A stretch of 64,000 bases of DNA from Ginglymostoma cirratum (lineage: Eukaryota): assembly GCA_024137785.1 (NCBI GenBank), contig JAHRHZ010000002.1:20834898-20898897 (forward strand), in the 5' to 3' direction. A program made the position numbers and the translations under genes. A model generated the notes under the pieces. That model worked only from the letters and a program-made list of their open reading frames with translations, ran no database searches and was not told the DNA's origin. Every line of letters starts with the position of its first letter. Positions within the stretch are counted from its first letter, which is position 1. Below are positions 20,901-64,000 of this stretch, in pieces.

Positions 20901-20956
20901 ATATTGATGGGAAAAACTCTGCCCCGCTGACAATCTGCAGGATTGAAGGACACTGA
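5956..20956 (+). CDS. Butyrophilin-like gene 1 (spliced): join(5956-5995,6760-7128,12106-12390,13182-13301,13596-13622,15133-15159,17410-17436,17712-17738,18053-18079,20406-20956); 499 aa; SP-IgV-IgC-TM-coiled coil-B30.2
   Basis: All introns GT-AG and phase 1; joined frame is open for 1500 nt; domain order is the butyrophilin family architecture. Confidence 0.88.
6760..7128 (+). CDS. Gene 1 IgV exon
   Basis: VVLDC...MEVHW...YRDRTELF...[20 protein letters not shown], a BTN/MOG/B7-type V domain; acceptor tctccag, donor G|GTCAGT; 369 nt. Confidence 0.95.
8590..11235. mobile_element. Decayed Penelope-like element pieces in opposite orientations (minus about 8590-9790, plus about 9800-11235) with a nested young insertion at 9187-9488
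   Basis: GIY-YIG-like [10 protein letters not shown]...[13 protein letters not shown] on minus; RT thumb region [20 protein letters not shown] on plus. Confidence 0.75.
11430..11736 (-). mobile_element. HE1-type (V-SINE) tRNA-derived SINE
   Basis: GGCAGCACAGTGGTTAGCAC head; V-domain GTGGAGTTTG..ATTCTCCC..GTCTGC.TGGGTTT; CR1-like tail. Confidence 0.85.
12106..12390 (+). CDS. Gene 1 IgC exon
   Basis: [19 protein letters not shown]...YTCVINN, the BTN C-domain signature; acceptor ttgcag, donor G|GTCTGT; 285 nt. Confidence 0.95.
13182..13301 (+). CDS. Gene 1 transmembrane exon
   Basis: [40 protein letters not shown]; long pyrimidine tract and acag acceptor; 120 nt. Confidence 0.92.
13596..13622 (+). 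CDS. Gene 1 27-nt micro-exon GLRKSEDNL
   Basis: ttttccag| ... |gtaagt; paralog 49309-49335. Confidence 0.85.
13881..14555. mobile_element. Solo LTR (TGTGATG...CATAACA) with 4-bp TSD CTCT
   Basis: TG...CA termini with short inverted repeats; TSD; same family as 54681-55332. Confidence 0.8.
15133..15159 (+). CDS. Gene 1 27-nt micro-exon EHQRLLDVT
   Basis: gttacag| ... |gtgagt; paralog 53690-53716. Confidence 0.85.
17410..17436 (+). CDS. Gene 1 27-nt micro-exon ECEKLQQKL
   Basis: ctctttag| ... |gtaaga; paralog 57560-57586. Confidence 0.85.
   Translation, partial: NVRNFSRS
17712..17738 (+). CDS. Gene 1 27-nt micro-exon EQWRPLVQS
   Basis: ccttttag| ... |gtatgt; identical peptide in paralog 62122-62148. 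Confidence 0.88.
18053..18079 (+). CDS. Gene 1 27-nt micro-exon EWNRIQSYA
   Basis: ctttgcag| ... |gtaaaa; W-containing pre-B30.2 exon typical of BTNs; paralog 63400-63426. Confidence 0.88.
18388..19072 (+). mobile_element. 5'-truncated Penelope-like element (GIY-YIG endonuclease end plus pLTR)
   Basis: ORF 18444-18971 [29 protein letters not shown]; flanked by TCTACAG repeats; absent at the paralogous site near 63750. Confidence 0.85.
19215..19545 (+). mobile_element. SINE-like bipartite element sharing head and tail with the LINE at 49566-53216
   Basis: 5' part matches 49610-49855; 3' GGGACAGGCAATAAA.ACTGG tail matches 53150-53215. Confidence 0.65.
20406..20956 (+). CDS. Gene 1 B30.2 (PRY-SPRY) terminal exon
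   Basis: [17 protein letters not shown]...ERFD...CVLG...[10 protein letters not shown]...[16 protein letters not shown]; stop TGA 20954-20956. Confidence 0.95.
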
Positions 20957-46100: not shown

Positions 46101-49100
46101 ATGCCAGAGAACAATTTTATGGTGCACGCAGGTCAACTTCATAGTGAATTAAATGTTTCTGCAATGTTTATGAGCTTTTAAAAGGTCCTGTTCGAGAGTT
46201 TTAAAAAACAATGTTGATCCTGGAGCCTCTTTGAAGGCCCAGAAACGAGGGCCATTTGTAGAAACTTTGTCCTGATGAATAATTTGACTATGGGTCATTT
46301 CTGTCTGGATTGTCCCTCTCTCATCTCTCTGAATGCAGTGTCTTCTGCCCTCCCCCAACTTCTTGCCCTGACAGATTGTGATTGAATCATGGTTGCCCTC
46401 CAGAAAGTACAAGTCAGCTACGATCTGACCGAGTGGTGTAGAGAGGCCATGACAGGCTTTGCGGCCTACTCCCCTTCCTGATGTCTCTGTGATTGCAGGT
46501 ACAGGCCGCCAGCCCAGGATTGAGATGGAGGGCCAAACGGGGGATGGCATCAGACTGGGCTGCAGATCCGAAGGGTGGTACCCAGAGCCACCCATCCTGT
46601 GGACGGACGGAGACGGAGAGAATGTAGCAGCCCAGCAGCAAACCATGTATCAGCCGGACACTCAGGAACTGTTCACAGTCAGCAGCTTCATCGAGATCCC
46701 CAAGCAGTCCACCAACAAGTACACTTGTGTCATTAATAACATGATTCTGAAGGAGAAACAGGAGGCTTACATCCAGATTGCAGGTCTGTCACGGTGGGAG
46801 AAGACCTTTACAGATACAAAGCAAACTGGGGGAAAGGACATGAATCTGATTGTAGAGAAATATATAAAATCCCGAGGAAACTCTGTGATTGAAACTGGCT
46901 CCTTATGGCCCTGTTTAGCCAGAAGTGTCAAAGAGAGGCCCCTCATGGCTTTGGCTTGCCTCTTGTGGCAACAGAAGACATTTCACGGGAGGGAGAGAGA
47001 GAGTGATGGAGTTTGAGGAAGAGTGTGAAGCTGCAATAGAGGGAGAAGGAGTGGATGTGATGCAGGTTCAGGGGAGGGAGTGAGTGTGATGGAAGTGGGG
47101 AGGGAGAGGGTTGAATGGAGTTTTCAAAAAGGGAGAGATGTGATGGAGAGAGAGTGTGTGGGTGATGAAGGGAGAGGGAGGTAGTGGAACGGATGTTGGG
47201 AAGAGGGAGACGAGTAATGGAGGGTGAGGGGCTGATTGAATTTGGGTACATAAAGGGCATGGATAGGTTGAAGAGTCAAGGTCTTTTCCCCAGGGTAGAG
47301 CAGTCCAAAATCAGAGGGCATAGATTTAAGGTGAGAGGTAAAAGACTTAAAAGGGACCCAAAGGGCAATGTTTCATGAGAGGATGGTGCAAGTATGGAAT
47401 GAGCTGCCAGAGGAGGTGGTGGAGGCTGGTACAATTACAACATTTAAAAGATATTTGGATGGGTATTTGAATAGGAAGAGTTTGGAGGGATTTAGGCCAA
47501 TTGCTGACAAATGGGACTAGATCCGTTTAGAATATCTGGTTGGCATGGTTGAGTTGGAGTAAAGGGTCTGTTTCCATGCTATACATTTCTATGACTCCTT
47601 ATCATTCTAAAGGGTGTGACAATGGGTTTGTGTTAACTTAAACAGTTGAATGGTTCATTTTCTCACTCTCTCCCTCCTCACTGTCCACCCCCTTCTCCTT
47701 TCCCTCAACCCCGATCTCTGTCTGTCTCTCTTCTCCCTTCTCACCCTCTCCTTCTTCCTCCCCTCCATCTTGCCACCTCTCCGCCTCAAACTCTTATTTT
47801 CACTTTCTTTCTCTCTGTCTCTTACTCATTCTCCATCCTTCCCCTCTCCCTCTGTCCTCAATGTTTATGCCCTCCCCACTCTCACTGTCAAATTTGTCTG
47901 TCCCTCTTCCCTCTTCCCGCTTACCCTTGCCACCTCCTGCTCTGTCTCTCTTCTCTCTCTCTCCCTCTTGCTTACTCCCTCTTCCCCCTCCTCCTCCCTT
48001 TCCCACACAATCTTCTCCCCTCCCTCTCCTCCTCCCTCTCATTCCCTCTCTCTTCCCCCGCTCTCCCTTACATCCACACAACCTTTCCCCTCTCCCTCTC
48101 CTTCTCCCACTCTCTCTCCTCTCATTCTCTCTCCTCTCTGTGTCCCTCTCTTCCCCTCCCCTTCCTTGCCTTCCTCTCTTCACCTTCCCTTTCTCTCCAT
48201 ACAGATTCCTTCTTCCCCCATGTTTCCGAATGGCAGATAGCATTCTGGATCCTGTTTGCTCTGATTTTTGCAATAGTCGCTGCCGCAGTGTGGTACCTTC
48301 GGAAATTACAGAATGAGATTCAAGGTGACGACCTCTGCTCAAACACTGACAACTCTTCTCTAAGAATAGAATACTGCGTACAATCTGGTCACCCTTCTGT
48401 AGGAAGGATGCTGTTAAACTTGAGAGGGTCCGGAAAAGGATTTACAAAGATGTTGCCAGGTTTGGAGGGTTCAAATTATAGGGAGAGGTTGAATATGCTG
48501 GGACTTTTTCCCTGGAGTGTCAGTGGCAGGGGCAATCTTATAGAAGTTTATACAATCATGAGGGGAACAGATAGTGTGAATAGCTAAGGTTATTTCCAAG
48601 GGTGGGGGAGTCCAAAACTAGAGGCCATTGGTTTAAGGTGAGAGGGGAAAGATTTAAAGGGGACCCGAGGGGTAACTTTTTCACACAGAGGGTGGCGCAT
48701 GTATGGATTGAGCTGCCAGAGGAAATGGTGGAGGCTGGTACAATTACATCACTTAAAAGACATCTGGACGAGTACATGAGTAGGAAGGGTTTAGAGGGAG
48801 GAGCAAATTACAGCAGATGCTGGAATTTGTACTGAAAACAAAAAGTGCTGGAGATCAAGCAGATCATAGCGGGTCAGGCAGCATCCATGGAGAGAAAGTA
48901 AACTAAAGTTTTGAGTCTAGATGACGCTTCATCAGAGCATCACTTCGAGGGATGTGGCCCAAATACTGATGAATGGGACCAGGTTAGATTGGGATGTATG
49001 GTCGGTATGGACGAGTTGGACCAAAGGGTTTGTTTTCCAGCTGTATGACTCTGATGAATCTATAATAATCCATAAACAGAATCTAATAATTTGTTAACAC

Positions 49101-52100
49101 AACCTAAAACAGACAGTGCTGGAAATATTCCATAGATCATGCAGAATCTGTGAAGAGAGAGACCAAATTAATATTTGAGGGGAAATAAGGATTTATTTTT
49201 AGTGAGGTGTATAATGAGGAACCAGTTCATGATAGTCTGATATTGACACCATCTCCAGAGGTCATGGTGCCCATTGGATTCATTCATTTATTTGGTTTTC
49301 TTTTCTAGGCCTCAGGAAATCTGAAGATTTTTGTGGTAAGTGATGTTTCTTCAGTCTGTGGGACATGTGCTGATGTTATATTGACTCTCCCTGTTGAGGA
49401 ATTTCACACTGTCATCCTGACCTTTACTGTTTCTGTCTTGAGAGGGGCCAGACCCCTCCTATATGTTACTGACCACAACGGTCTCAGGAGGTTCCCTGTG
49501 TCAGTTCCTAATCCTACTCTCAATTATCTTGTCAGGGTATTCTATGAGTATAAATCCTACCTGTAGGGGATCGGTGATGGCCTAGTGGTATTATTCCTAG
49601 ACTATCGCAACCAACTAATGTTCTGGGGACCTGGGTTCAAATCGCACTAATCGATGGTGGAATTTGAAATCAATAAATTTAAAAATAAGTCTGGAATTAA
49701 GAATCTACTAAACACCATGAAATCATTGCCGATTGTTGGAAAAACCCATCTGGTTCACCAATGCCCTTCAGGAAAGGAGATCTGCCACCATCACCTGGTC
49801 TGGCCTACATGTGACTCCAGACTCACAGCGTGTGGTTGACTCTCAATTACCCTCTGAAATGACCTAGCAAGCCATCCATCATAGAATCCCTACAGTGTAG
49901 AAACAGGCCCTTTGGCCCAACGAATCCACACCGACCCTCAGGGCATTCCATCCAGACCCAACCCCTATCACCCACCTAAGTTACACATCCCTGAACACTA
50001 CAGGCAATTTAGCATGGTCAATCCACCTACCCTGCACATCCTTGGACTGTGGGAGGAAACCCGAGCAACTGGAGGAAACCCACGCAGACCCTGGGAGAAT
50101 GTGCAAACCCCACACAGACAGTCACCCTAGAGTGGAATTGAACCCAGGTCCCTGGCGTTATGAGGCAGCAACGCTAACCACTGTGCCACTGTGACGCCCC
50201 ATTCAGTTGTACCAATCGCTACAAAGTCTTAAAGAAATGAAACTGCGCGGATCACCTGGTATCAACCTCGGCACCGGAAAAGGCAACGGCAGAAACAGCC
50301 CTGTTGATCCTGCAAAATCCTCTTTGCCAACATCTGGTGGTTAGTGCCAAAATTGGGAGAGCTGTCTCAAAAGCTAGTTAAACAACAGTCTGACATAGTC
50401 GTACTCACAGAATCGTACCTTAGAGACAATGTTGCAGACACTACCATCTGCAGGACAGACCCAGCAGAGGTGGTGGCACAGTGGTATACAGTCGGGAGGG
50501 AGTTGCTTTCGGAGTCCTCAACATTGACTCTGGACACCATGAAGTCTCATGGCTTCTTAAACATGGGCAAGAAGCCCTCCTGCTGATTACCACATACCTC
50601 CCTTGGTTGATGAATTGGTACTCCTCCACACTGAATAAGTCTTAGATGAAGCACTGAGGATGGCAAGGGCACAAAATGTACTCTGGGTGGGGAATTTCAA
50701 TGTCCACCACCAAGAGTGGCTTGGCAGCAGTGCTACTGATGGAGCAGGTTGGGTCTGAAAGGACATAGCTGCTAGTCTGGGTCTGTGGCAGGTGGTGAGG
50801 GAAAAACATACTTTACCTCATCCTTACTAATCGGCCAGCCGCAGTTGCATCTATCTATGACCGTATCACAAGAGTGACCATTGCACAGTCCTATGGAGAC
50901 GAAGTCCCACCTTCACATTGAGAATAACCTCCATCTTGTTGTGTGGCACTATCACCGTACTAAATGGGACAGACTTCGCACAGATCTAGAAACTTAAGAC
51001 TGGGCATCCATGAGGCGCTGTGGGCCATCAACAGCACCAGAATTGTACTCTAGCACAATCTGTAACCTCATGGCCCGGCATATCCCCCACTCAGCCATTA
51101 CCATCAATCCAGGGGATCAACCCTGGTTCAATGGGGAGTGCAGGAGGGCATGACAGGAGCAGCATTAGGCATACCTGAAGATGCAGTATCAATCTGATGA
51201 AGCCACCATATAGGACTACTTGCATGCCAAACAATGAAAGCAGCAAGTGATAGACAGAGCTAAGTGATCCCACAACCAACGGATCAGATCTAAGCTCTGC
51301 AGTCTTGCCCCATCCCGTCGTGAATGGTGGTGGACAATTAAACAACTCACTGAAGGAGGAGGCTCCACAAATATCCCCATCCTCAATGATAGAAGAGCCC
51401 AGCACATCAGTGCAAAAGATAAGGCTGAAGTACCGAATGGATGATCCATCTCAGCCATCTGCAGTGGTCCCCAGCATTACAGATACCAGAGTTCAGCCAA
51501 TTCGATTCACTCCACGTGATATCAAGAAATGGTTGGAGACACAGGATACAGCAAAGGATACAGTCCCTGGCAACATTCCGGCAATAGTAACTAAGCACTT
51601 GTGCTCCAGAACTTGTCATTCTCCTAGCCAAACTGTTCCAGTACAGTTACAACGCTGTTATCTTCCCGACAATGTGGAAATTTATCCAAGTATGTTCTGA
51701 ACACAAAAAGCAGGAGAAATCCAACTCAGCCAATTACTGCCCCATCAGTCTACTTTCAATAACCAGTAAAGTGATGGAAGGTGTCATCAACAGGGCTATC
51801 AAGCAAAACCTGCTCAGCAATAACCTGCTCAGTGACGCCCAGTTTGGGCTCCTCCAGGGCCACAGATCCTGACCTCATTACATCCTTGGTTCAAACGTGG
51901 GCAGAAGAGCTGAATTCCAGAGGTGAGGTGAGAGTGTCAGCCCTTGATATCGAGGGTGCATTCGACTGAGTGTGGTATCAAGGAGCCCTAGTAAAACTGT
52001 AATCAATGGGTATCAGGGGGCAAAATCTCCGACACATACCCGACACATAGAAAGATGGTTGTAGTCGTTGGAGGTCAATCATCTCAGCTCCAGGACATCT

Positions 52101-55100
52101 CTGCAGGAGTTCCTCAGGGTAGCGTCCTAGGCCCAACCATCTTCAGCTGCATCATCAATGAACTTCTCTCCATCATAACGTCAGAAGTGGGGATGTTCGC
52201 CGATGATGTTTGCACAATGTTCAACACCATTCGTGACTCCTCAGATACTGAAGCAGTCCGTGTTCACGTGCAACAAGATCTGGACAATATCCAGGCTTGG
52301 GCTGACAAGTAGCAAGTGACATTCGCACCACACAAATGCCAGGCTATAACCATCACCAATAAGAGACAATGTAACCACCGTCCCTTGACATTCAATGATG
52401 TTACCATCACTGAATCCCCCACTATCATCATCCTGGGTGTTATCATTGACTAGAGACTCAACTGGATTCGCTGCACAGACACAGTGGTTAGAAGAGATAA
52501 CAAGGCGTGGGGCTGGATGAACACAGCAGGCCAAGCAGCATCATAGGAGCAGGAAAACTTGACGTTTCGGGCCTAGACCCTTCATCAGAAATCAGAAATC
52601 TTCTAACAGTGGTTAGAAGAGCAGGTCAGAGCCTAGGAATACTGCGGTGAGTAACTCACCTCCTGACTCCTCAAAGCCTGTCCACCATTCTACAAGGCAC
52701 AAGTCAGGAGTGTGATGGAATACTCCCCACTTGCCCTGGATGAGTGCAGCCCCAACAACACTCAAGAAGCTTGACACTATCCAGGACAAAGCAACCTGCT
52801 GGAATTTCACTACATCCACAAGCAACCACATCCTCCACCACCAATGCTCAGTAGCAGCAGTGTGTACTATCTACAAGATGCACTGCAGATATTCACCAAA
52901 GACCCTTAGACAGTACATTCCAAACCCACAACCACTTCCATCTAGAAGGACAAGGGCAGCAGATATATGGCTACACCACCACCTTCAGGTTCCCCTCCAA
53001 GCTACTCACCATCCTGACTTGGAACTATATCGCCGTTCCTTCACTGTTGTTGGGTCAAAATCCTGGAATTCCCTCCCGAATGGCATTGTGGGACAACCCA
53101 AAGAAGGAGGTTCAAGAAGCTAACTCACCAACACCTTCTCAAGTGCAACTGGGGACAGGCAATAAACACTGGGATCCAGCGACACCCACATCCCACAAAT
53201 GAATAGAAAAAAGAAACATGCAACCCCATGCTCCAAGATTCTCTATCCCTTTCTGTCTCTTCCTCTCTCACAACTCTCTCTCTTTCTCCCCTCTCTTTTG
53301 GCCCCCTTGCCTCCACTCTTCCACCCACTCTTTCCCCCCTTTCTCTTCCCCCCCCCCCCTCCCCCCCTCTGTCTCTTTCCCCCTCCATCTCTTTCTGGCA
53401 CATCTCTTTTTCCCCACCTCTCTCTTCCCCACCTTCCCACACTTCTTCCCCTTCTTCTCTCTTCTTCCCTTTCTCCCCCCTCTCTCTTCCCTTCTCCATG
53501 TCCCCCTTCTCCTCCTCCTTTCTCCGTACTCCTGCTTTCTCTCTCCTCCTCCTCTCTCCCTCTGATCTTACAATGTGAGAATGGGCAATGTGATTTTGGT
53601 GATGCGTGCTGCATTGGGAATGGAACAGGGTTCAGTGTGAGGGGTGAAGGGCTGTTGCTGATTTAATGTTTTCGTTTGATCTGTTACAGAACATCTAAAG
53701 CTGATGGAAGAAGTCGGTGAGTAACCGTTCAAAGCAGAGAGTTAAATGTGATGGGAGTGGGAAACCCAGTGATGTGGACATATCGTCACATCTGGGTGAA
53801 AAACATTTGTGTAACTGTAATTCTAGGTCTGGTGATATAATGGATTACAAATAGATTGGGTTTGAAGGTCTCCATGGCGTGAATAATAAGAAAGATTTGC
53901 ATTTTATGGCACCTTTCACATTCTGAGGATGTCCCAATGTTCTTTGTTAAAAGTGACGTACATAACAAAACAAGGACTGGGAGTAAGAGTCGGCCACTTG
54001 ACTTGAGCTGTTTCATTGTTCAGTCTGATCATGATGAATCTACTTCCCTGCACTATCCCCCATAAAGACTCTACCATTTTATTTTTCTGTATTTTGGCTT
54101 GATGAGGTAAAGAATTCTTAAGATTCACAACCCTTTCAGTGAGGAAATTCTCTTCACCACAGACCTGAATGGGAAAGATGGGTTTCAGAATGGCCAGTGA
54201 GTTAGCTTTGAGAATCTAAGGAGACTGTCAATACAGTGCAATGTTAGAATGGTCAGTTTCTGTCTGTTGGAAAGGTGAACTCTATGTCATGGGTGAACTG
54301 AGGTTCCGTCATGAGCTTTTGGCATCAAGTCACAGTCCAAGATTTGGGTACAATGCTGTTGCTGACACTTCAGCGCATAGCTGAGGGAGTGCTACACTGT
54401 CAGAGGCACTGTCTTTTACATCAGACTTTAATGCAAGACATTGCATGCTTTTGAATGTTTTGTAGCTCTTAGCTGTATCTCTAGGAAGAACAAAGAACTT
54501 CTCCCCAGAGTCCTAGCCAATATTTACCACTCTGTAGTGGAATCACAGGAATCTGTTGATTTGGTAATTGTCCTGGTTACTGTTTTGTGGAATCTTCCTG
54601 TGCACAGATTAGTTGCTGCAGAAGGACACAGTACAGAAGAGGCCTTTCAGCCCATCAAGTCTATACTGATCTGTTTCCTTTGTGATGAGATATGCTTTTG
54701 AGAGGGATTTGTTTTGTCTTGGTTCTTCTCAGATAGGACTGTTGTAAACCTGCTGACAAGGTGTCTGCTCCTGGAAAGCAGAGTAAATAACTTTGAGTTT
54801 ATTTTTATATTAGGCAAAAGCAGCATGAATGTGTGGAGTCAGGCTCACAGAGACCTAGGGTTTTAGTCTTCGTTTTGCTTTCACTTGTTGAAGTTGGGTT
54901 TTGGAATGAAGCTGCTAAATACAGTCTCTCTCTTTAGAGCTGAAAATGCTTGAGTTTTCTCTCTGCTGCTAGATTCATTCTGTCAGTGTTCCTTCTCCTG
55001 GACTGGAGGACATAGCACGTGAGGGAAATCTGTTTTACCGAACTTGCCTTTGAAAGGGTGTGTTTATGGGGTGCTGCCATATTAGAACATTTGATGAGTT

Positions 55101-58100
55101 GTAATTAAATGATATATTATTTTGTTAAGTCTTCTAGGAGAATTATTCTTTGCTTTTCTTGTATTTTAGCTGTGATATAGGAATAAAGTGTGTTTAGCTT
55201 AAAGCCTAGTAATTTGAACAATCAAATCACATCTTCAAAGTAGTGCCTTACCTTGCCTTGAAATAAGATAAAAATTAAGGTCTATGCTATCTCCTTGATA
55301 TATTTGAGGGGGTTTGAGTCTGGTCCATAACACCTTAATTCGACAGTTCTGTTTCTACAAGACACTGGAGGACACACTGTAACTGTTACTTAAATCTAAA
55401 TTAATCCTCAGTATTTCTCACATTGATTTTTTTTAAACTTTCAGAGCAAGAAAAAATGAAGGCAGATAAAGGTAAGTGATCAGAAACCCGGGGATGGTGG
55501 AGGTGGTTCCATTGAGATCCTGACTGTGTATCTGTGTGTCCGGGCAGTTCACAGCACATCCAAGACTCGGGTCAATTTCAAACGGAGATAACAAATGGTC
55601 ATTTTATTTGTCATCTCACTGAGGTGATTTTACTTTTTTTTTGCAGAGTATGGAAGACTTCACCAGAAGATTGGTAAGAACTTGAAACCAATTGGATAAA
55701 GGTGATGGAAGAGAGGGAGTTGTGGATGGATTAACCCCACAGTAAGAGAATGGGAAAGCAATGGGGAAGGCTGGATGGTAACTCTGACTGGGACCAGACC
55801 CTAGTAGGAGAGAAGCAGTTTTGGAATAACGTGGAAGTCCTGCAGATCCTCCAATGGGTCTGCCGTAAAGTGGGTGATGGGTGAGGGAGTGGGTTTGGGC
55901 CTCTGTCATTCTGGGAGTAAGAGTAAGACAAGAGTTGACCTGGTTACTGTCAACTCTGAATCACATTGTTGTTTGTTTTACATTTCAGAGATCGCTAAGC
56001 AAAAAGGGAAACAAGGTGAGTTATGAGAACACACATTATTTGGATTGTAGTATTTTATTTCAGTGTCAGAATGTCTGAACACAATTTAACAGGTTTGTGA
56101 AAAACTATTAATGGCCTTATCACAAATTGTTCCATTAAAGCCAACGCCAAATTATAATGCTCTCCTGTGACTATTGGTGAAGTGGGCGAGTTAACTCAGC
56201 CAATCCTTCAATGTGAGCTGTTCACATTCACCAATCTCAGAACTGGGGTCCTCGAGAAGCTATTTTCCCAGGAATTTCCTGAGCTGATACAAACAGATCT
56301 GCGGATATCTGGAAACACATGCATGTTGAAATGAGCAAGTTTCAATATCAACAGTCTTCAGCTATTTATTAATAGTGCAATGAGACCACTGGCTTCACCA
56401 ATCCGTAAAGTGCTCGCTGATCAAAACCGTCAGCAAATGCTGGAAGGACAGAGTCAACATTGGTTTCAAAAGAAGCATTGGTTTACGTGGGTAGAGTCTA
56501 AACAGAGCATAAACGGCAAAATTATTCTCCAGATTCCTGCGATTTTGTTGACTTTGATATAAAGACTTATGAAACTTGAGCAGGATGCCTGAAGCTCATC
56601 GCAAGGTTCTAACCAGAGGGATAATCTTCACATTAACACACACTCCTCCTCCTCCCTGCAAATCAACAAATCACATGTCATTTTTTAAAATTTGGGCATG
56701 TGTTTGTGAATCAGTCATTGATTTCACAATCGATTCTCTTCATAGTTCTATAAATAACCAAATAAAGTAACGTCTACCATATTTCAGTATTTTCTAGTTA
56801 TTTCTAATCTTTGATATTCTGATGTGAGGAATACAAACCTCACTACAGCAGGAGAACAGTGCATTCCTGACAACACACAATTTCATCTAATTCTACACAC
56901 CCTGACTGGGTTCTGACATTTTAACCTGTAAACTTGTGGCCATCCAACACTCTGCTGCCCATGTCTTCACTCATCCTAAGTTCCACTCACCTGCTTACTG
57001 ACCTACATTAGCTCCTCGTAAGACAATGTCTCCATTCCTAATTTCTCACTCAAGTCTTGCAGTCCCTTCATGTCCTTGCCCTCTCTACTCTGTAACTCTG
57101 AGATTCCTGTGGTCCTTTAATTCTGGCCTTTTGCACACCAAAAATTATAATGTTACTTCATTGGAGAATGTAATTTCAGTTGCCTCCGTTCCAAACTCTA
57201 CTCCTGCATCCTCAATTCACTTTCATCTTTAAAACACATCGTAAAAACATCCCTGTTTGATAAGCTTTTAGTTACCTCTCATATTTTTATTTATAATATT
57301 TGAAGCATTTTGAGATATTGTTGAAGAAAAACAGCCACTCTAAAAATGTAAATTGTTGTGTAAAATACGTACAATGTATTGTCTGACAAGTGAGCAATGT
57401 CACACAAGGATCATTCAGATAACAATTTCTTTTAACTGCTTTTTTTTTCTAAACTATATTCTCTTTCAAAAAATCTCTGATTGGGAAATGATTTTCAGTG
57501 ACTTTTTTGATATAATCAATGATCTGGTTTTAAATTGCCTTGTCTATTTTTCTCTTCAGAATGTAAGAAGCTTCAGCAGGAGTTTGGTAAGAGATTATTT
57601 CCAAATCATAAACACTCTGGGATTGGGTTTTCAACTCGTGTTCAGCACTGGTTTCTTCACTAGCATCACATGGCCATTGAAAGCTAAAAGCAATGTGGAG
57701 GACTATCCCAAGTTTGTTTCTGGTGCTATCAGCTTAAATGGGTTTGTTGTTGCTGGATGTATCTAGGGGTAATTGATGGGAATAGCGTAGTGAGAGCTTT
57801 ACTCTATATCTAGCCCATGCTGTACATGTCCTGAGAGTATGTGATGGGACAGTGTAGAAGGATAAGGTTTAGTCTGTTTCTGACCTGTGCTCTACTTGTC
57901 CTGGGAGTGTTTGATGGGGACACTGCAGACAGAGCTTTACTCTGATTCCAACCCTGTAGTTTACCTGACCTGGCGGTGTGTGATGGGATAATACAGGGGG
58001 AGCTTCACTCTCTGTATAGTCCATGCTATATACCTGTGACTATTTAATGAGACAATGTGAAAGGATGGGTTTTACACTGTATCTAACCTGTGCTGTAACT

Positions 58101-60836
58101 GTCCTGACAATGTCTGAAAGGGACAGCGTTGAGGGAGTTTAGCGCTGTCCTGTCCTGGGTCTCCTGATACTGCTAATGTTTTAATTTTGTGCCCTGACTC
58201 TCAGCCTCAGACTCTCACCCAGTTAGTGTAATATTTTGGTAGGGTTAATGACAGACACAACGGTGGTATGTGCTACCTGAGATGGTTTTGCTTGCCAGGA
58301 CAATATTGAGTTAACCAATTTAGCTCTTGCTGCCCTTTCCCTCTGAGGGAGTGGTGGGGGTGGGGATTGGGAAACGTTGGATAATGTGGATCTCTGAGGA
58401 ATTAAGGTTCCACACTGACATTCCTGGCAGGGATGGGACAGAACAGTGGGTGGTGGAATGGATAATCTCATCGCTGACCTGTGCAGGGTGAGGGGAGGCC
58501 CGAACAGTGTTCACACCAAGTGGTGACTCCTTCTGGAAGCTTCTATGCTTTAATATGTCTGTTTCTTTATCCTTCTACAGAAAAGGAGAAGGCTGCCATT
58601 CATGCAGGTAAGCAGAGAGCTGAGGAATGGGAGTTCCTGTTGTAGGAGAGGACTAGCAGATGTGTTACCAATTCTGATTTGATGCACTCCTGGAGGTTTC
58701 AACATGTGACTTTGTGCCTCCAATTCCTTGTAGCCAATCAAACAGGCCTTCCCTATTCTCCAGTTTGTTTTAGGAGTTCAAAAACATTCAAATAATTCAC
58801 ACACTGTGTAATGTCTGTGAGCTTCCATTCCTGGGCATTGGTCACTGTGACAAAGATATTGGCCAGTCATTTCTGGAGAGTTGGTTCCCCATGGCAGGGA
58901 AGGATGGGTGGTGAAGATCTGTTTATGTTACAAATATTTAACGTCAGGGTTATTGCCTTCTGGTCACTTCCCTACTCTGGAGGGAAATGAGACAGAGTCA
59001 TAGAGATGTACAGCATGGAAACAGACCTTTCAGGCCAACTAGTCCATGCTGACCAGATATCCTAAATTAATCGAGTCCAATTTGCTGGCATTTGGTCCAT
59101 ATCCCTCTAAACCCTTCCTATTTATATACCCTAAATGTTGTAATTGTACCAGCCTCCACCTCTTCTTCTGGCTGTCCATTGCATACACTCACCACCTTCT
59201 CTGCAAAAAAATTGCCCCTTTGGTCCCTTTTAAATCTTTCCCCTGTCATCTTAAACCTATGCCTTATAGTTCTGGACTCCCCTACCCTGGGGAAAACATC
59301 TCGGCCATTCACCCTCTCCATGTCCTTCATGATTGTATAAACTCTTATAAGGTCACCCCTCAGCCTCTGACGCTCCAGGGAAAATAGCCCCCACCTCTTC
59401 AGTGTCTCCCTATAGCTCAAACCCTCCAACCCTGGTAACATCTTTGTAAATCTTTTCTGTACCCTTTCAAGTGTCACAACACCTTTCCTATAGCAGAAAC
59501 TCTTCACTCCCCAGCTAACACCAATGTTGGCCTGACCCAATGGTGACCCTGGCATTTGGGTAGATGATTCCTGATGTAGTGGGGGGCTTGCAGTACGGAT
59601 ACAGCTGGCACAGAGAGCAGTCCAATGGATCGATGTTGCACTACCCACTGCTCCAGCTTGTGGTGGTTGGTGCTACCACTGGCCACTGCTGGTTTCTCAC
59701 AGGCCGAGTGAGACTAGCTGATGGAGACTGAGCTCAGAGCAGAGAGTTCAATATGGAGTGCAGAGGGCAACAAAGAATAGAAGATGGTGACATTGTGAAA
59801 TTAAGGTTTGTAATTGATACTTCTCCCTTGTCTGTTACAGAACATGAGCAGTTCAAGAAAGAAGTTGGTAAGTGGTTATATCGAATTTTGAATTTACATC
59901 GATGGTCACTTTGGACGAAATGCATATTTGCTGCAGCTGTTTCTCAGTCTGTGCTTGGACAGGGGGCTGTTTTCTCAGTCTGTACTCAGACTGGGGGCTG
60001 TTTCTCAGTCTGCACTCAGGCTGGGGGCTGTTTCTCAGTCTGTGCTCGGCCTGGGCCACTTTGTCAGTCTGTGGTTGGGTTGGGGACTGTTTTCTCGGCC
60101 TGTGCTTGGGCTGGGGAGCTGTTTCTCAATCACATTATCAGTGTTGAGGAGCACACATTTTAGCCTTGCTTTACCCTTTTCACTAGCACTGTATAAAGTC
60201 TCACCTGGTTTATTGTTCCATGTTGTTGCTAAGCTCTTGATTCTGTCTTACAGATGAAGCGAGGGAGTCAGACAAAGCAGGTATGTGACTGTGTGTGGGC
60301 CTTGAGGAGTAAACTTCACCTCTACACTAGGATGGGGAGGGGACTGTGATCGTGTATGCTCTGACAGAGAACAGGTAGAAAACCCAGGCACAGCAAATGC
60401 TTCTCTCTTCACTAATTTTTATTTTCAATCTCTCAGTCTCACTCTCTTTTTGTGTTTTTTCTCGCTTTCCTCTCCCATTCTCACCCTCTGCTCCTCAGCA
60501 TCTCTTCCTCTCTCTCTGCTCTTAATGCTCCCCATGTCCTTTCTTTCTTTCTCTTTTTCATTCCTTCTCTTTCTATTTCTTCTTTGCCTTTGCTTTCTCT
60601 TCTCATGTTTCCCCATTGCCCCCTCTCTTCTCATCCTACTCATATCTCTCCATCTCCCTCTCTCTTCTCCTCCTAGTCATGTCTCTCCATTTCTCCACTT
60701 TGTTCATTCCCTCTTCCCTATATTCTGTCTTCTCAAATCTCTCTCTCTGTATTCTTTGTCCACTTAACTCTGTCTGTCTGACTGTCTTACTCTGTCTGCC
60801 TGTCTGTGTCTCTCTTGCTGTCTCTGCCTATCCATA

Positions 60837-60867
<31 letters not shown>

Positions 60868-63426
60868 GTGTCTGTCTCTTACCTTGTGCAAAATGATTGG
60901 TTAGTGATTTAAAACAGAAAGTGCTGAAGAAAGTCAGCAGGTCTGGGAGCATCAGTTGAGAGAGAAAAACAGAGTTACAGTTTGTTTCAAATCAACGTCA
61001 TTATCTTTGTACTATCATTTGTAAATCACTTGGTAAAGTGTTAGAAGATAGTATATGAATACAGGTCAGTTAATTTCCGTTTGAAGTCAGCATTTGGAAA
61101 TGTCTGTTGATATTGAAACTTTTACGTGTTGGTAATATCATATAGTCAATTGTTTATAAAATCATTCATTTTGTTTGAAGATTTTAGCTTTCTTGCTCTA
61201 ACTATTTCTGATCATTCCTTACTTGCAGATTATCAGAAGCTACTCACTGAATTTGGTGAGTTGTTTGTCATTAAAAATGTGGCTTCATCTTCAGCTTGGC
61301 TACAGTTAGTAAATGAGCATAAAACCAGGTTCTGGTCTGGACCATTCTTTTCCTCACTCGGGTATAACAAGCTTGGAATGACTGGTTTCCCTCCTGATGT
61401 TGCAATCAACCTGTCTCCTGACACATATTTGTAGGCAGAGCTGCAGACTTTCATGACAGTATGAACATCTAGAGATCACCATGGCTTCAAATGGTGGCTT
61501 TGTGAAAAATGACTTGAGCATTGGACCCCTCGTTTTCAGCTGAAATTATAGAGTTTGAAATAATTCAAACTGTAGATTCACTTTGAATTGATCATGTGAG
61601 ATTCTTCACATCCCAGTTCATGATCATGGATTTGATTTTTAATTTGCATCAGGGTGGCAAGGCTAGCTTTTATAAAATGACTCTGGGCAATGGGTCCAGT
61701 TTTGTTCGAGATGGAAACTCAGGCAATTCTATAGCAGGTGGCTAATCCTCAAGTGCTTCATGGAAAATATACTCTTACATGCTCTTTATCAAATATCTAC
61801 ATAACAACAGATTTGAAGTGGGGAACTTCTGAAACTCACTCCATGGTGCCACGAGGTGGCTACATGTTGACGTAGGAAAATAGAATGGGAACTGCTGGCA
61901 TCGGTATTTACAATGTTGATCAGAAATGCTGCCCAGAGGTCGGGACACCACACCCTCGCAAGATTTGCTTAACAACGCATCAGTTATTGCTGCCATAACT
62001 TAAAAAAGATGTGACTTTTATTCATTAAGAAAACTCTGGCATGAAAGGAAAATTTGTTGATAATGCGAAATCTGTTGAGTGGGCTTTATTCACACTTATT
62101 CATTTCACTATTTCCTTTTAGAGCAATGGAGACCTCTGGTCCAGTCAGGTATGTTCCCTGTATGAACGCACTCGAAAAAAAAATCTTCACTTGTTATTTC
62201 TATTAATGATTTGGATGTGAATATTGGAGGTATGCTTAGTAAGTTTGCAGATGACACTTGGTGGTGTAGTAGACAGTGAAGAAGGTTACCTCAAAGTACA
62301 ACGGGACCTTGGTCAGATAGGCTGATGGGCTGAGGAGTGGCAGATGAAGTTTAATTTAGATAAATGTGAGGTGCTGTATTTTGGAAAGGGAAATCAGGGC
62401 AGGATTTTTAAAGTTAATGGGACAGTCCTAAAGGGGTGTTGTTGAACAAAGAAACCTCAAAGTACAGGTTTATAGTTCCTTGAAAGTGGAGTCGCAGGTA
62501 GACAGGATAATGAAGAAGGCATTTGATATATTTGCCTTTATTGGTCAGTGCATTGAGTATAGGAGTTGGGAGGTCGTGTTGTGGCCGTACAGAACACTTT
62601 TGGAATACCGTGTTCAATTCTGGTCTCCCTGATATAGGAAGGATGTTCTGAAAGTGGAAAGGGTTCAGAAAAGTTTTACAAAGGTGTTGCCAGGATTGGA
62701 GGGTTTGAGCTATAGGAAGAGGCTGAATAGGCTGGGGCTGTTTTTCCCTGGAGTGTCGGAGACTGAGGGGTGACCTTATAGAATTTTATAAAATCATGAG
62801 GAGCATGGATAGGGTGAATAGCCAAGGTGTTTTCTGCAGGGTAGGGGAGTCCAAAACTAGAGGGCATAGGTTTAAGGTGAGAGGTGAAAGAATTCAAAGA
62901 GACCTAAGGGGCAACTTTTTCACACAGAGGGTGGTGTGTCTATGGAATGAGCTGCCAGAGGAAGTAGGTGGAGGCTGGTACAATTACAACATTTAAAAGA
63001 CAGCTGGATGGATATATGAACAGGGATATGGGCTAAAAGCTGGCAAATAAGACTACATTAATTCAGCATATTTGTTTGGTATGGACGAGTTGGGTTAAAG
63101 GGTCTGTTTCTGTGCTGTACAGACTTGAATGAATCTATTAGCATATGTGTATTGTTTGACGTTTGTCCAGGATAATGTTGAAAAAAATAGAATAGGAGGG
63201 TGTGAAGATCAAAATTATGTTAATCGCTACTTTTACTTAATTTAGTCCAGGGGTTTTGTGTTTGCGTGTCTTTGCTTGTCACTACCCACTGTGGGTCAAC
63301 CTCACATCCGTGGTTTACTGAAAACCACAATGTACTTTAGCTGTTGTCTTATTTGAGAGTATTACAGATTATTAATTACAGATGTTACTGTTTCTGCAGA
63401 GTGGAACAGGATACGGAGCCATGCAG
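43103..63426 (+). CDS. Butyrophilin-like gene 2, 3'-partial: join(43103-43142,43486-43860,46499-46783,48205-48324,49309-49335,53690-53716,55445-55471,55647-55673,55989-56015,57560-57586,58581-58607,59841-59867,60254-60280,61229-61255,62122-62148,63400-63426); B30.2 exon expected beyond 64000
   Basis: All introns GT-AG phase 1; open frame of 381 codons; collinear with gene 1 to the window end (63770 region matches 19090 region). Confidence 0.85.
43486..43860 (+). CDS. Gene 2 IgV exon
   Basis: VVLEC...MEVRW...YRGRTELF...[20 protein letters not shown]; 375 nt. Confidence 0.95.
46499..46783 (+). CDS. Gene 2 IgC exon
   Basis: GIRLGCRSEGWYPEPPILW...YTCVINN; 285 nt; 9 of 95 residues differ from gene 1. 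Confidence 0.95.
47240..47600 (+). mobile_element. CR1 3' fragment
   Basis: GLFPRVEQSKIRGHRFKVRG motif; absent from gene 1. Confidence 0.8.
48205..48324 (+). CDS. Gene 2 transmembrane exon
   Basis: [40 protein letters not shown]; 120 nt. Confidence 0.92.
48365..49060 (+). mobile_element. CR1 3' fragment with a small nested PLE-terminus piece (about 48800-48940)
   Basis: TRGHWFKVRGERFKGDPRGNFFTQRV motif; absent from gene 1. Confidence 0.8.
49309..49335 (+). CDS. Gene 2 micro-exon m1 GLRKSEDFC
   Basis: ttttctag| 27 nt |gtaagt. Confidence 0.85.
49566..53216 (+). mobile_element. Decayed CR1-group LINE (APE plus RT) with a tRNA-like 5' end, interrupted by an HE1 SINE (49878-50200, minus) and a PLE terminus (52497-52605)
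   Basis: QSDIVVLTESYL, NYCPISLLSITSKVMEGVIN, GVPQGSVLGPTIF, MFADD; ends in GCAATAAA and an A-rich tail. Confidence 0.85.
53690..53716 (+). CDS. Gene 2 micro-exon m2 EHLKLMEEV
   Basis: gttacag| 27 nt |gtgagt. Confidence 0.85.
54681..55332. mobile_element. Solo LTR (TGTGATG...CATAACA) with 4-bp TSD CCTT
   Basis: TG...CA termini; TSD; homologous to 13881-14555. Confidence 0.8.
55445..55471 (+). CDS. Gene 2 micro-exon m3 EQEKMKADK
   Basis: actttcag| 27 nt |gtaagt; no counterpart in gene 1. Confidence 0.75.
55647..55673 (+). CDS. Gene 2 micro-exon m4 EYGRLHQKI
   Basis: ttttttgcag| 27 nt |gtaaga; no counterpart in gene 1. Confidence 0.78.
55989..56015 (+). CDS. Gene 2 micro-exon m5 EIAKQKGKQ
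   Basis: catttcag| 27 nt |gtgagt; no counterpart in gene 1. Confidence 0.75.
57560..57586 (+). CDS. Gene 2 micro-exon m6 ECKKLQQEF
   Basis: ctcttcag| 27 nt |gtaaga; paralog of 17410-17436. Confidence 0.85.
57765..58160 (+). repeat. Degenerate minisatellite, about 60-65 bp unit (GTGTTTGATGGGACAGTGTAGAGGGAGCTTTACTCTGTATCTAACC...), about 6 copies
   Basis: Recurrent GATGGGA..., AGCTTTACTCT and CCTGTGCTGTA motifs at regular spacing. Confidence 0.75.
58581..58607 (+). CDS. Gene 2 micro-exon m7 EKEKAAIHA
   Basis: cttctacag| 27 nt |gtaagc. Confidence 0.75.
58995..59500 (-). mobile_element. CR1 3' fragment
   Basis: LERVQKRFTKMLPGLEGLSYRE...RLRGDLI. Confidence 0.85.
59841..59867 (+). CDS. Gene 2 micro-exon m8 EHEQFKKEV
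   Basis: ctgttacag| 27 nt |gtaagt; resembles m2, including acceptor context. Confidence 0.78.
59935..60130 (+). repeat. About 31-bp tandem repeat (CTGTTTCTCAGTCTGTGCT...GGGGG), about 6 copies
   Basis: Directly visible repeats of TTTCTCAGTCTG. Confidence 0.85.
60254..60280 (+). CDS. Gene 2 micro-exon m9 DEARESDKA
   Basis: tcttacag| 27 nt |gtatgt. Confidence 0.72.
61229..61255 (+). CDS. Gene 2 micro-exon m10 DYQKLLTEF
   Basis: acttgcag| 27 nt |gtgagt. Confidence 0.78.
62122..62148 (+). CDS. Gene 2 micro-exon m11 EQWRPLVQS
   Basis: ccttttag| 27 nt |gtatgt. Confidence 0.88.
62200..63140 (+). mobile_element. CR1 ORF2 3' fragment
   Basis: SKFADDT through [10 protein letters not shown]; absent from the paralogous gene 1 intron. 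Confidence 0.85.
63400..63426 (+). CDS. Gene 2 micro-exon m12 EWNRIRSHA
   Basis: ttctgcag| 27 nt |gtaaga. Confidence 0.88.
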
Positions 63427-64000
63427 GTAAGATTCTCAATGTATAGGACTACCCTAAACAGGAACATTTGTACCAAATGTGTGCGTGTGTGTGTGTGCGT
63501 GTGTGTGGGCATGGGTGTGGGCAGGCATTGTCACGCATGAGGGGGCTATCTACATCAAACTAGCTGACCAGAAAACATTCCCACCCTTACCTCCTGCTAT
63601 TGGAGCATCGGAAGAATTTACAAGATTGCTTAACAATTTGATTGGCCATATTATGATTGAAATTCCCCAGACACAAGTTGTGAAGTGTCCCAGAGACAGG
63701 GAGTCTACTCACTTTAACACAAGACCTCCTTAGGATTTTAAGACAATTGACAGCTCGATTTGCACTTTTTCTGACATCACATCTTTATTCCTCATTTTTT
63801 CTTCTAATTTGAATTCAAATTCTCAACTACCCCGGTGGGATTTGAACTCATCTTCTCTAGGCTTTGGGTGCAGCAGCAGAATCAGTACAGACTTGTAATA
63901 AAATATACTGTTCTATACAGCATGAAAGGAAGGTGCAACTTGGTTGCGCCATCTTTGTTGTAGCAGTGCACCAGGAATAGTTAACTGTCAATCATTATTC

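What the first reader, a model, noticed from the sequence alone, without database searches (positions are those of the whole stretch)
49309..63426. Modular cytoplasmic stalk built from twelve 27-nt phase-1 micro-exons
Seen: twelve exons of exactly 27 nt spread over 14 kb, each with a pyrimidine tract, AG acceptor and strong GT donor, none with an in-frame stop, encoding 108 charged helix-prone residues; gene 1 has five. Known: mammalian BTNs have only a few small exons here (mostly 21 nt heptads plus one of 27 nt), chicken BG genes have long arrays of mostly 21-nt exons, and the juxtamembrane coiled coil governs BTN3A pairing and signalling. Inference: an all-nonad, length-variable stalk that sets B30.2 distance from the membrane and partner choice. 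Any exon can be skipped in frame, which allows combinatorial isoforms. I know of no description of this, but cannot search the literature.
Basis: partly seen in the sequence, partly recalled or inferred. Interest (0 to 1): 0.85.

Follow-up and report, generated by a model that had tools for sequence, protein, structure and literature searches.

The report
Shark butyrophilin stalk of 27-nt exons
A shark butyrophilin immune gene builds the rod between its membrane anchor and its inner sensor domain from twelve separately spliced 27-base exons; eight of them are seen joined one after another in RNA, and all twelve are kept in the same order in six shark species, so this is a real, longer and differently phased version of the small-exon stalks already known in butyrophilins and chicken BG genes, not a new kind of system.

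Summary
The window carries two tandem butyrophilin-like genes on the + strand. Gene 2 has twelve exons of exactly 27 nt (49309-63426) and gene 1 has five. All are phase 1, end in G and have no in-frame stop. Strong AG-N27-GT pairs number 19 on the + strand, against 0-4 for any other length, 0 on the - strand and 0.17 in shuffles of the region. PolyA RNA reads join m3 to m10 consecutively at exactly these borders, and an RNA contig joins m1-m2-m3. No skipping was seen. Automated RefSeq models of five other sharks (two orders) carry the same twelve 9-residue units in the same order. Paralogues carry 2, 4 or 5.

The units alternate between a hydrophobic type and a polar type. This gives an 18-residue, five-turn period (about 3.6 residues per turn). 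AlphaFold2 models one continuous helix from the membrane span through the stalk. The first three units and the last one align with the human BTN2A1 juxtamembrane region, which is a solved coiled coil.

Most likely this is an elongated helical, probably dimeric, spacer. Combinatorial splicing is unsupported. Dimerisation is inferred, not shown.

The scan had already noted the 18-residue alternation on this stretch (s1-879794) and a neighbouring butyrophilin pair with the same tiny-exon layout (s1-879193).

The parts
43486..43860 (+). Gene 2 IgV exon (375 nt, phase 1-1)
   Evidence: Pfam V-set E=3.5e-9. 75% identical to P0153. Borders from splice sites.
46499..46783 (+). Gene 2 IgC exon (285 nt, phase 1-1)
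   Evidence: Pfam PF22705, butyrophilin-type Ig-C, E=1.6e-23. Borders.
48205..48324 (+). Gene 2 connecting peptide and transmembrane exon (120 nt); ends in G before gt
   Evidence: 83% identical to the TM region of Stegostoma BTN2A2-like P0151. Borders.
49309..49335 (+). m1, first 27-nt exon (starts with a Gly codon); counterpart of gene 1 exon 13596
   Evidence: 21/27 identical to the gene 1 exon. Its end is joined to m2 in an RNA contig of run X5 (loose end at 55444).
53690..53716 (+). m2, type A (hydrophobic) unit; counterpart of gene 1 exon 15133
   Evidence: The X5 contig reads m2 directly before m3.
55445..55471 (+). m3, type B (polar) unit; absent from gene 1
   Evidence: RNA joint m3>m4: 3 reads plus one contig.
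55647..55673 (+). m4, type A unit; absent from gene 1
   Evidence: RNA joints m3>m4 and m4>m5 (5 reads).
55989..56015 (+). m5, type B unit; absent from gene 1
   Evidence: RNA joints m4>m5 and m5>m6 (9 reads).
57560..57586 (+). m6, type A unit; counterpart of gene 1 exon 17410
   Evidence: 23/27 identical to the gene 1 exon. RNA joints m5>m6 and m6>m7 (6 reads).
58581..58607 (+). m7, type B unit; absent from gene 1
   Evidence: RNA joints m6>m7 and m7>m8 (7 reads).
59841..59867 (+). m8, type A unit; the best conserved unit (8-9 of 9 residues across three species)
   Evidence: RNA joints m7>m8 and m8>m9 (5 reads). Conservation.
60254..60280 (+). m9, type B unit; absent from gene 1
   Evidence: RNA joints m8>m9 and m9>m10 (5 reads).
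61229..61255 (+). m10, type A unit; absent from gene 1
   Evidence: RNA joint m9>m10. 6-7 of 9 residues conserved.
62122..62148 (+). m11, the Pro-containing unit; counterpart of gene 1 exon 17712
   Evidence: 25/27 identical to the gene 1 exon. 8-9 of 9 residues conserved in P0153 and P0155. Not covered by the one reads call.
63400..63426 (+). m12, last unit before the B30.2 exon, which lies beyond the window end; counterpart of gene 1 exon 18053
   Evidence: 25/27 identical to the gene 1 exon. Its orthologous residues in P0153 align with the last juxtamembrane residues of human BTN2A1. Not covered by reads.
6760..7128 (+). Gene 1 IgV exon
   Evidence: Pfam V-set. 79% identical to P0151.
12106..12390 (+). 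Gene 1 IgC exon
   Evidence: Pfam PF22705 E=4e-22.
13182..13301 (+). Gene 1 transmembrane exon (120 nt)
13596..18079 (+). Gene 1 stalk: five 27-nt phase-1 exons (13596-13622, 15133-15159, 17410-17436, 17712-17738, 18053-18079)
   Evidence: The same five units, in the same order, appear in the annotated Stegostoma protein P0151.
20406..20956 (+). Gene 1 B30.2 (PRY-SPRY) exon with stop codon
   Evidence: Pfam PRY E=1.9e-26 and SPRY E=2.1e-21. 83% identical to P0151.

Best explanation
Gene 2 is an intact, transcribed butyrophilin-family gene of an orectolobiform-like shark. Twelve constitutively spliced 27-nt phase-1 exons encode its cytoplasmic juxtamembrane region.

Together they give 108 residues that continue the transmembrane helix as one long alpha-helix. 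That is about 16 nm if fully helical, against about 7 nm for the five units of gene 1.

The units alternate between two types:
- Type A is hydrophobic: E-[H/Y/C]-x-[K/R/Q]-[L/F]-x-x-[E/D]-[V/I/F].
- Type B is polar: [E/D]-x-[E/A]-K-x-x-[A/I/G]-K-A.

The real structural module is therefore an exon pair of 54 nt, or 18 residues, or five helical turns. It places a hydrophobic patch on the same helix face every ~27 A.

By homology with human BTN2A1 and BTN3A, whose TM and juxtamembrane regions form a continuous dimeric coiled coil, the stalk most likely forms a nearly straight (18/5) parallel dimer. That dimer would hold the B30.2 domain at a fixed distance from the membrane.

Evolution acts on whole exons. 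The twelve-unit array is kept exon for exon in two shark orders. The tandem neighbour, gene 1, differs from gene 2 by two clean blocks holding m3-m5 and m7-m10.

Shown: the exons, their splicing (m1-m10), their conservation, their periodicity and the helix prediction. Inferred: dimerisation, the spacer function and the direction of exon loss.
For: - Exon anatomy and statistics.
- Consecutive RNA joints whose lengths equal the introns m3/m4 to m9/m10, plus m1-m2-m3 in an RNA contig.
- Family: V-set, BTN-type Ig-C and PRY/SPRY.
- The same twelve units in the same order in H. ocellatum (P0153), C. punctatum (P0158), C. plagiosum (P0159), Cetorhinus maximus (P0155) and Carcharodon carcharias (P0160). 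Unit-by-unit identity is highest for m6, m8 and m10-m12.
- Paralogues carry 5 (P0151), 4 (P0161) and 2 (P0157) units.
- Hydrophobicity power peaks at period 3.56-3.64 in the window gene and in both orthologues. Only 14-18 of 2000 residue shuffles reach it. The A/B alternation is shown.
- AlphaFold2 on P0153 gives a single helix over residues 244-378, with pLDDT 82-92 over about residues 290-360.
- HMMER aligns P0153 with full-length human BTN2A1 through the TM, the first ~30 stalk residues and the last unit.
- A cryo-EM preprint reports continuous TM and juxtamembrane coiled coils of ~120 A for BTN2A1 and BTN3A1-3A2 (bioRxiv 10.1101/2024.10.02.616253).
- An 18/5 periodicity is an accessible coiled-coil periodicity, whereas a bare 2-residue insertion into a heptad is not (PMC4786415).
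- Gene 1 and gene 2 are collinear except for gene 2 segments 54238-56622 and 57738-62017.
Against: - No direct evidence of oligomeric state. The homodimer test of the P0153 stalk gave no verdict.
- The type B units put small or polar residues in the would-be core, so a two-stranded coiled coil would be weak there.
- In the window gene the power at 3.45-3.55 (54.9) is almost as high as at 3.55-3.70 (56.7), so 18/5 versus 7/2 is not separated for this species.
- m10>m11>m12>B30.2 splicing was not examined in this species, and the gene 2 B30.2 exon is outside the window.
- RNA depth is low (3-9 reads per joint), from one library of unknown tissue.
- The direction of the exon change (loss in gene 1 or gain in gene 2) rests on weakly supported single-exon trees.
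Confidence: 0.7

Rival explanations
1. The array is a cassette system. Because every exon is phase 1-1 and ends in G, cells skip subsets of the twelve exons and produce many stalk lengths.
For: - Frame and split codon are preserved whichever exon is skipped.
- An older Chiloscyllium punctatum model (P0154) has 8 units and lacks exactly m4, m5, m9 and m10, that is, two 18-residue pairs. The RefSeq model of the same species (P0158) has all 12.
Against: - Every listed GT..AG joint between m3 and m10 is between neighbours. No skipping joint reached the listing threshold of 3 reads; one unlisted joint remains unknown.
- RefSeq gives the twelve-unit form in five species.
- Splice sites are uniformly strong, as expected for constitutive micro-exons.
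- P0154 may simply be a gene model that missed micro-exons.
Confidence: 0.15
2. The stalk does not dimerise. It is either a stable single alpha-helix (ER/K-like) acting as a monomeric spacer, or an amphipathic helix that lies on the inner membrane leaflet.
For: - 44% charged residues, many E and K/R at i/i+4, and a sparse hydrophobic seam.
- A period of about 3.6, typical of an unsupercoiled amphipathic helix.
- AlphaFold2 models a confident helix for a single chain.
Against: - E+K+R make up only 40%, well below what I recall for ER/K single helices (own knowledge, not tested).
- The hydrophobic positions 2, 5 and 9 of type A units are the conserved ones.
- The homologous human region is a solved dimeric coiled coil.
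- Net charge is near zero (25 acidic, 23 basic), which is not favourable for binding an anionic leaflet.
Confidence: 0.2
3. The nine-residue units form alpha/beta coiled-coil breaks (beta-layers), as nonads do in trimeric autotransporter stalks.
For: Nonads inserted in heptad coiled coils form beta-layers (PMC4786415). Some type B units contain K-A-D-like triplets.
Against: - Beta-layers were described in trimers with a specific motif.
- Here the units alternate so that an 18/5 helical period results.
- AlphaFold2 models an unbroken helix.
- The human homologues are dimers.
Confidence: 0.03
4. The 27-nt intervals are chance pseudo-exons in introns.
For: None beyond the two stray candidates at 7916 and 34388, both of which carry in-frame stops.
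Against: - 12 observed against 0.17 expected.
- Length and strand specificity.
- RNA joints.
- Presence in annotated proteins of five other species.
Confidence: 0.01

Closest known systems
Chicken BG genes (butyrophilin family): cytoplasmic tails of 13-36 micro-exons (PMC4046983, PMC5938342)
   Same: - A long array of tiny phase-1 exons after the TM exon, with a split first codon.
- Each exon encodes one repeat of a charged helical tail.
- Exon number differs between paralogues.
- The hydrophobic core positions sit inside the exon, not at the split codon.
   Different: - BG exons are 21 nt (a few of 18 or 24) and give true heptads. Here they are 27 nt in two alternating types, giving an 18-residue period.
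- BG has one Ig domain and no B30.2. Here the layout is IgV-IgC-TM-stalk-B30.2.
- BG exon number varies even between haplotypes. Here twelve units are fixed across two shark orders.
Human BTN2A1 and BTN3A1/A2/A3 juxtamembrane coiled coil (PDB 8zk1, 8zhr, 8za9; bioRxiv 10.1101/2024.10.02.616253; PMC10665462)
   Same: - Same family and same domain order.
- P0153 aligns with BTN2A1 through IgV, IgC, TM, the first ~30 stalk residues, the last unit and B30.2.
- The TM and juxtamembrane region is a continuous helix.
   Different: - Between the two aligned blocks, human BTN2A1 has 9 residues where P0153 has 67.
- The predicted continuous helix is 135 residues, or about 200 A, against about 120 A in the human complexes.
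- The sizes of the mammalian small exons were not checked here.
18/5 coiled-coil periodicity (heptad + heptad + stutter) and nonad beta-layers (PMC4786415)
   Same: 18 residues over five turns is a recognised, nearly straight coiled-coil periodicity. The A+B exon pair has just this length, and the hydrophobicity spectrum peaks at 3.56-3.64.
   Different: Here the 18-residue period is built from two separately spliced 9-residue exons. No structure shows knobs-into-holes packing for it.
Automated RefSeq models of shark butyrophilins (for example XP_060706870.1 H. ocellatum, XP_078422643.1 C. maximus)
   Same: They contain the same twelve units, so the protein sequence as such is already in databases.
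   Different: They are unnamed 'BTN1A1-like' or 'BTN2A1-like' predictions. In the searched library I found no paper that describes the 27-nt exon array or its 18-residue period.

Membership tests
Butyrophilin (BTN/BTNL) family | N-terminal IgV (V-set) domain | tested here: met
   Pfam V-set for both genes, E=1e-9 to 4e-9. Aligns with human BTN2A1 IgV via P0153.
Butyrophilin (BTN/BTNL) family | Membrane-proximal butyrophilin-type IgC domain | tested here: met
   PF22705 E=1.6e-23 (gene 2) and E=4e-22 (gene 1).
Butyrophilin (BTN/BTNL) family | Single transmembrane helix followed by a juxtamembrane region encoded by small phase-1 exons | tested here: met
   120-nt TM exons. 12 and 5 exons of 27 nt. 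Helix 244-378 in the P0153 model.
Butyrophilin (BTN/BTNL) family | C-terminal B30.2 (PRY-SPRY) domain | tested here: inconclusive
   Met for gene 1. The gene 2 exon lies beyond the window end. Its orthologues P0153, P0155 and P0158 have PRY/SPRY.
Chicken BG-type heptad-exon tail | Cytoplasmic exons of 21 nt, each encoding a heptad | tested here: not met
   No strong 21-nt candidate on the + strand. All stalk exons are 27 nt.
Chicken BG-type heptad-exon tail | Phase-1 micro-exons with a split first codon, in a long array | tested here: met
Chicken BG-type heptad-exon tail | Single Ig domain and no B30.2 | tested here: not met
   IgV plus IgC, with B30.2 in gene 1 and in the gene 2 orthologues.
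Canonical left-handed heptad coiled coil | Hydrophobic period 3.5 (a/d) | tested here: inconclusive
   P0153 and P0155 peak at 3.58 and 3.64, with clearly less power at 3.45-3.55 (38.6 and 13.2). In the window gene the two bands are nearly equal, 56.7 against 54.9.
Canonical left-handed heptad coiled coil | Two or more chains packed knobs-into-holes | not testable with these tools
   The one complex job gave no verdict. The homologous human region is a solved dimeric coiled coil.
ER/K single alpha-helix (SAH) domain | Very high E+K+R content with few hydrophobic residues | tested here: not met
   E+K+R are 40% and 25 of 108 residues are hydrophobic. The threshold for SAH domains comes from my own knowledge, not from a tool.

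The most novel reading that the evidence does not exclude
The two-exon, 18-residue module works as a 'phase-preserving ruler'. Each exon pair adds five full helical turns (~27 A) to a nearly straight dimeric stalk without rotating the B30.2 domain. Each single exon adds 13.5 A and a half-turn flip. Whole-exon gains and losses (2, 4, 5 or 12 units among paralogues; 7 units between the two tandem genes here) would then set both the depth and the orientation of the sensor domain. That would decide which butyrophilin chains can pair in register, so exon count would be a genetic code for homo- versus heteromer formation. A more remote variant: the five hydrophobic patches at ~27 A spacing dock onto a periodic cytoskeletal partner. 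A BG tail is reported to displace tropomyosin (PMC5938342).
Probability: 0.15. Interest if true: 0.7.

Novelty: new variant of a known kind. Interest (0 to 1): 0.5.

Why it matters
Butyrophilins signal 'inside-out'. In humans the juxtamembrane coiled coil decides which chains pair and how the B30.2 sensor talks to the ectodomain. Sharks show that this rod was built from splice-modular units early in jawed vertebrates. The unit length is 27 nt and the period 18 residues, which differs from the textbook 21-nt heptad exons of chicken BG. The array has been held at exactly twelve units in two shark orders, while neighbouring paralogues carry 2-5.

This offers a natural length series for testing whether stalk length and register control butyrophilin pairing. 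It is also a clean example of how exon size, splice-site consensus (the G|AR split codon gives Glu or Asp) and helix geometry constrain one another.

It is not a new kind of system. The sequences already sit in automated annotations, so the value is descriptive and comparative.

Tried and rejected
- **Homodimer prediction** of the stalk of orthologue P0153 (residues 262-385, two copies): no verdict, score 0.01, controls not run. This is no evidence either way.
- **ESM Atlas look-alikes** for the stalk: no usable hit.
- **B30.2 of gene 1 against 1.8 billion representatives**: the best hits are mostly TRIM-like proteins and short-stalk BTN models. None has a nonad stalk, so this search did not help.
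The exon sizes in the other sharks' genomes could therefore not be read directly. Conservation is judged from protein models only.
- **Stalk-only protein search with P0153** found only hemiscylliid relatives. Rays, skates and chimaeras remain unsampled.
- **Single-exon trees** (IgV, IgC) to decide whether gene 1 lost or gene 2 gained seven exons: poorly resolved. The short-stalk genes group at 86/90 in IgV. IgC shows 90% identity between the two window genes, which may reflect gene conversion.
- **Relics of m3-m5 or m7-m10 in gene 1 introns**: none found. The blocks are cleanly absent.
- The database orthologue P0153 served as proxy. The twelve exon peptides were put in genomic order only inside local scripts, for the periodicity and composition counts.
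- **Literature**: no description of 27-nt exon arrays in shark butyrophilins in the searched library. Subscription journals are not covered.
Full report
**What is in the window**

Two tandem genes lie on the + strand with the layout IgV - IgC - TM - micro-exons - B30.2.

- Gene 1: IgV 6760-7128, IgC 12106-12390, TM 13182-13301, five 27-nt exons (13596, 15133, 17410, 17712, 18053) and a PRY-SPRY exon 20406-20956.
- Gene 2: IgV 43486-43860, IgC 46499-46783, TM 48205-48324 and twelve 27-nt exons from 49309 to 63426. Its B30.2 exon lies beyond the window end.

Pfam finds V-set, the butyrophilin-type Ig-C family PF22705, and PRY plus SPRY. All exons are phase 1-1 (375/369, 285, 120 and 27 nt).

The DNA between and inside the genes is full of decayed retrotransposon copies.

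**Check of the observation**

I scored every AG-N(L)-GT interval with one fixed acceptor and donor threshold.

- L=27 gives 19 hits on the + strand and none on the - strand. Every other length from 9 to 60 gives 0-4.
- Seventeen of the 19 are the claimed exons. The other two (7916, 34388) lie outside the stalks and have in-frame stops.
- Dinucleotide shuffles of 49201-63500 give 0.17 such intervals on average (maximum 3), against 12 observed.
- At a laxer threshold, no other stop-free phase-1 candidate of 15-36 nt with comparable sites lies inside either stalk.
- All 17 exons end in G and begin with A or G. The split codon is therefore G|NN whatever exon precedes. It reads Glu or Asp in 15 exons and Gly in the first exon of each gene.
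- The exons are purine-rich (mean 0.65 against 0.48 for the window). The introns are 175-4354 nt.

**Are they used?**

One reads call was allowed, and I laid it on 55400-61300 (m3-m10).

The polyA RNA-seq run X13 gives GT..AG joints that skip 175, 315, 1544, 994, 1233, 386 and 948 nt, with 3-9 reads each. These are exactly the seven introns between m3 and m10.

A contig of run X5 that ends on m3-m4 continues upstream with the end of m1 followed by m2. The spelling is that of gene 2, not gene 1.

No exon-skipping joint was listed. Depth is low, one joint was not shown, and the tissue is unknown.

m10>m11>m12 was not covered. Run X14 laid no reads.

**Relatives**

A search with the TM exon led to Stegostoma tigrinum 'BTN2A2-like' P0151. 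Its stalk is the same five units as gene 1.

Searching with the P0151 TM and stalk, and then listing cluster members, gave these 'BTN-like' RefSeq models:

| Model | Species |
|---|---|
| P0153 | Hemiscyllium ocellatum |
| P0158 | Chiloscyllium punctatum |
| P0159 | C. plagiosum |
| P0155 | Cetorhinus maximus |
| P0160 | Carcharodon carcharias |

All carry twelve 9-residue units between the TM and B30.2, in the same order as m1-m12. Unit by unit, the window gene shares 72/108 residues with P0153 and 60/108 with P0155. m6, m8 and m10-m12 are the best kept.

The array therefore predates the split of Orectolobiformes and Lamniformes.

Paralogues have 5 (P0151), 4 (P0161) and 2 (P0157) units. Two Chiloscyllium gene-1-like models have 24 residues where three nonads would give 27, so not every relative is 'all-nonad'.

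An older C. punctatum model (P0154) lacks m4, m5, m9 and m10, while the RefSeq model of the same species has all twelve. This is either a missed-exon artefact or a hint of skipping in pairs.

The 27-nt length in other genomes is therefore inferred from the proteins, not read from DNA.

**Internal structure**

The units fall into two alternating types.

- Type A (m2, m4, m6, m8, m10): E-[H/Y/C]-x-[K/R/Q]-[L/F]-x-x-[E/D]-[V/I/F].
- Type B (m3, m5, m7, m9): [E/D]-x-[E/A]-K-x-x-[A/I/G]-K-A, polar with small residues.

Five A+B pairs give an 18-residue period. m11 (with the only Pro) and m12 close the array.

At the DNA level, type A exons are still recognisably related to each other (16-19 of 27). 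Type B exons and all intron flanks are not. The duplications are therefore old.

The hydrophobicity spectrum peaks at period 3.56 (window), 3.58 (P0153) and 3.64 (P0155). Only 14-18 of 2000 residue shuffles reach this.

Coiled-coil theory explains the alternation. A bare two-residue insertion into a heptad (a nonad) strains a helix most, and in trimers it yields beta-layers. By contrast, 18 residues over five turns is an accessible, nearly straight periodicity (PMC4786415).

**Fold and homology to solved structures**

AlphaFold2 was run on P0153 with an 11-sequence alignment. It gives one helix from residue 244 to 378, covering the TM and the whole stalk, with pLDDT 82-92 over roughly residues 290-360.

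HMMER aligns P0153 with full-length human BTN2A1 in two blocks.

- The first block runs through IgV, IgC, TM and the first ~30 stalk residues (m1-m3 and the start of m4).
- The second block starts at the last unit (m12) and runs into B30.2.
- Between the blocks, the human chain has 9 residues and the shark chain has 67.

[quoted passage not shown] Juxtamembrane contacts control which BTN3A chains pair (PMC10665462).

The shark stalk is thus best read as an elongated homologue of that rod: 108 residues, about 162 A if helical.

Whether it dimerises is inferred, not shown. The single complex job returned no verdict.

**Gene 1 versus gene 2**

The two genes are collinear at 71-82% nucleotide identity through exons and introns, except for two blocks present only in gene 2.

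- 54238-56622 holds m3-m5.
- 57738-62017 holds m7-m10.

The twelve-unit form exists in lamniform sharks. In the IgV tree the short-stalk genes group together at 86/90. Loss of 3+4 exons in the gene 1 lineage is therefore the more economical reading. The trees are weak, however, and no outgroup beyond sharks was sampled.

The gene 1 B30.2 domain is only 42-45% identical to that of the twelve-unit orthologues, but 70-75% identical to another BTN lineage. Gene 1 may be a mosaic.

**Verdict**

The exons m1-m10 are shown in RNA.

Combinatorial splicing is not supported. 'Partner choice' is untested.

The closest known systems are the 21-nt heptad-exon tails of chicken BG genes (PMC4046983, PMC5938342) and the mammalian BTN juxtamembrane coiled coil. 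The shark array differs in exon size (27 nt), in its two-type 18-residue period, in its length, and in its strict conservation.

The sequences already sit in automated annotations. I found no paper that describes the exon array. I rate it a new variant of a known kind, of moderate interest.

The orthologue P0153 was used instead. The exon peptides were ordered only inside local scripts.

Noticed in passing
window 23737-27127 (- strand): Decayed non-LTR retrotransposon between the two butyrophilin genes. It has a reverse-transcriptase ORF (RVT_1, 24292-24795) and an ORF with a GDSL-esterase-like domain (26624-27127). Further RT-like ORF debris without a Pfam hit lies at 3809-4516, 36421-37617 and 59118-59648.
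   Followed up: partly
window 57764-58157 and 58946-59536: RNA depth peaks inside gene 2 introns, with many variant letters, odd non-GT/AG joints and very high contig depth in runs X5 and X6. These look like reads from expressed repeat copies elsewhere in the genome, not butyrophilin exons.
   Followed up: no
window 12106-12390 and 46499-46783: The IgC exons of the two tandem genes are 90% identical in protein. They are closer to each other than to their orthologues in other sharks, whereas the IgV exons are not. This may be local gene conversion between neighbours.
   Followed up: partly
window 20406-20956: The gene 1 B30.2 domain is 70-75% identical to another BTN lineage (P0037, P0025) but only 42-45% identical to the B30.2 of the twelve-unit orthologues. 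Yet its 5' half is collinear with gene 2. Gene 1 looks like a mosaic of two butyrophilin lineages.
   Followed up: partly
window 12917-13180, 14496-15083, 47646-48200, 53199-53666, 60450-60912: Long CT-rich low-complexity tracts (reading as S/L/P-rich ORFs) lie just upstream of both TM exons and inside stalk introns. Their role, if any, in recognising the micro-exons is unknown.
   Followed up: no
P0154 versus P0158 (Chiloscyllium punctatum): The older gene model lacks exactly m4+m5 and m9+m10, that is, two 18-residue pairs. The newer RefSeq model has all twelve units. This is either missed micro-exons or a transcript-based hint of pairwise skipping.
   Followed up: partly
window 33720-34775: Another first-stage note calls this a fossil viral envelope gene. 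I saw only a stray strong 27-nt interval with a stop at 34388 and did not examine the region.
   Followed up: no
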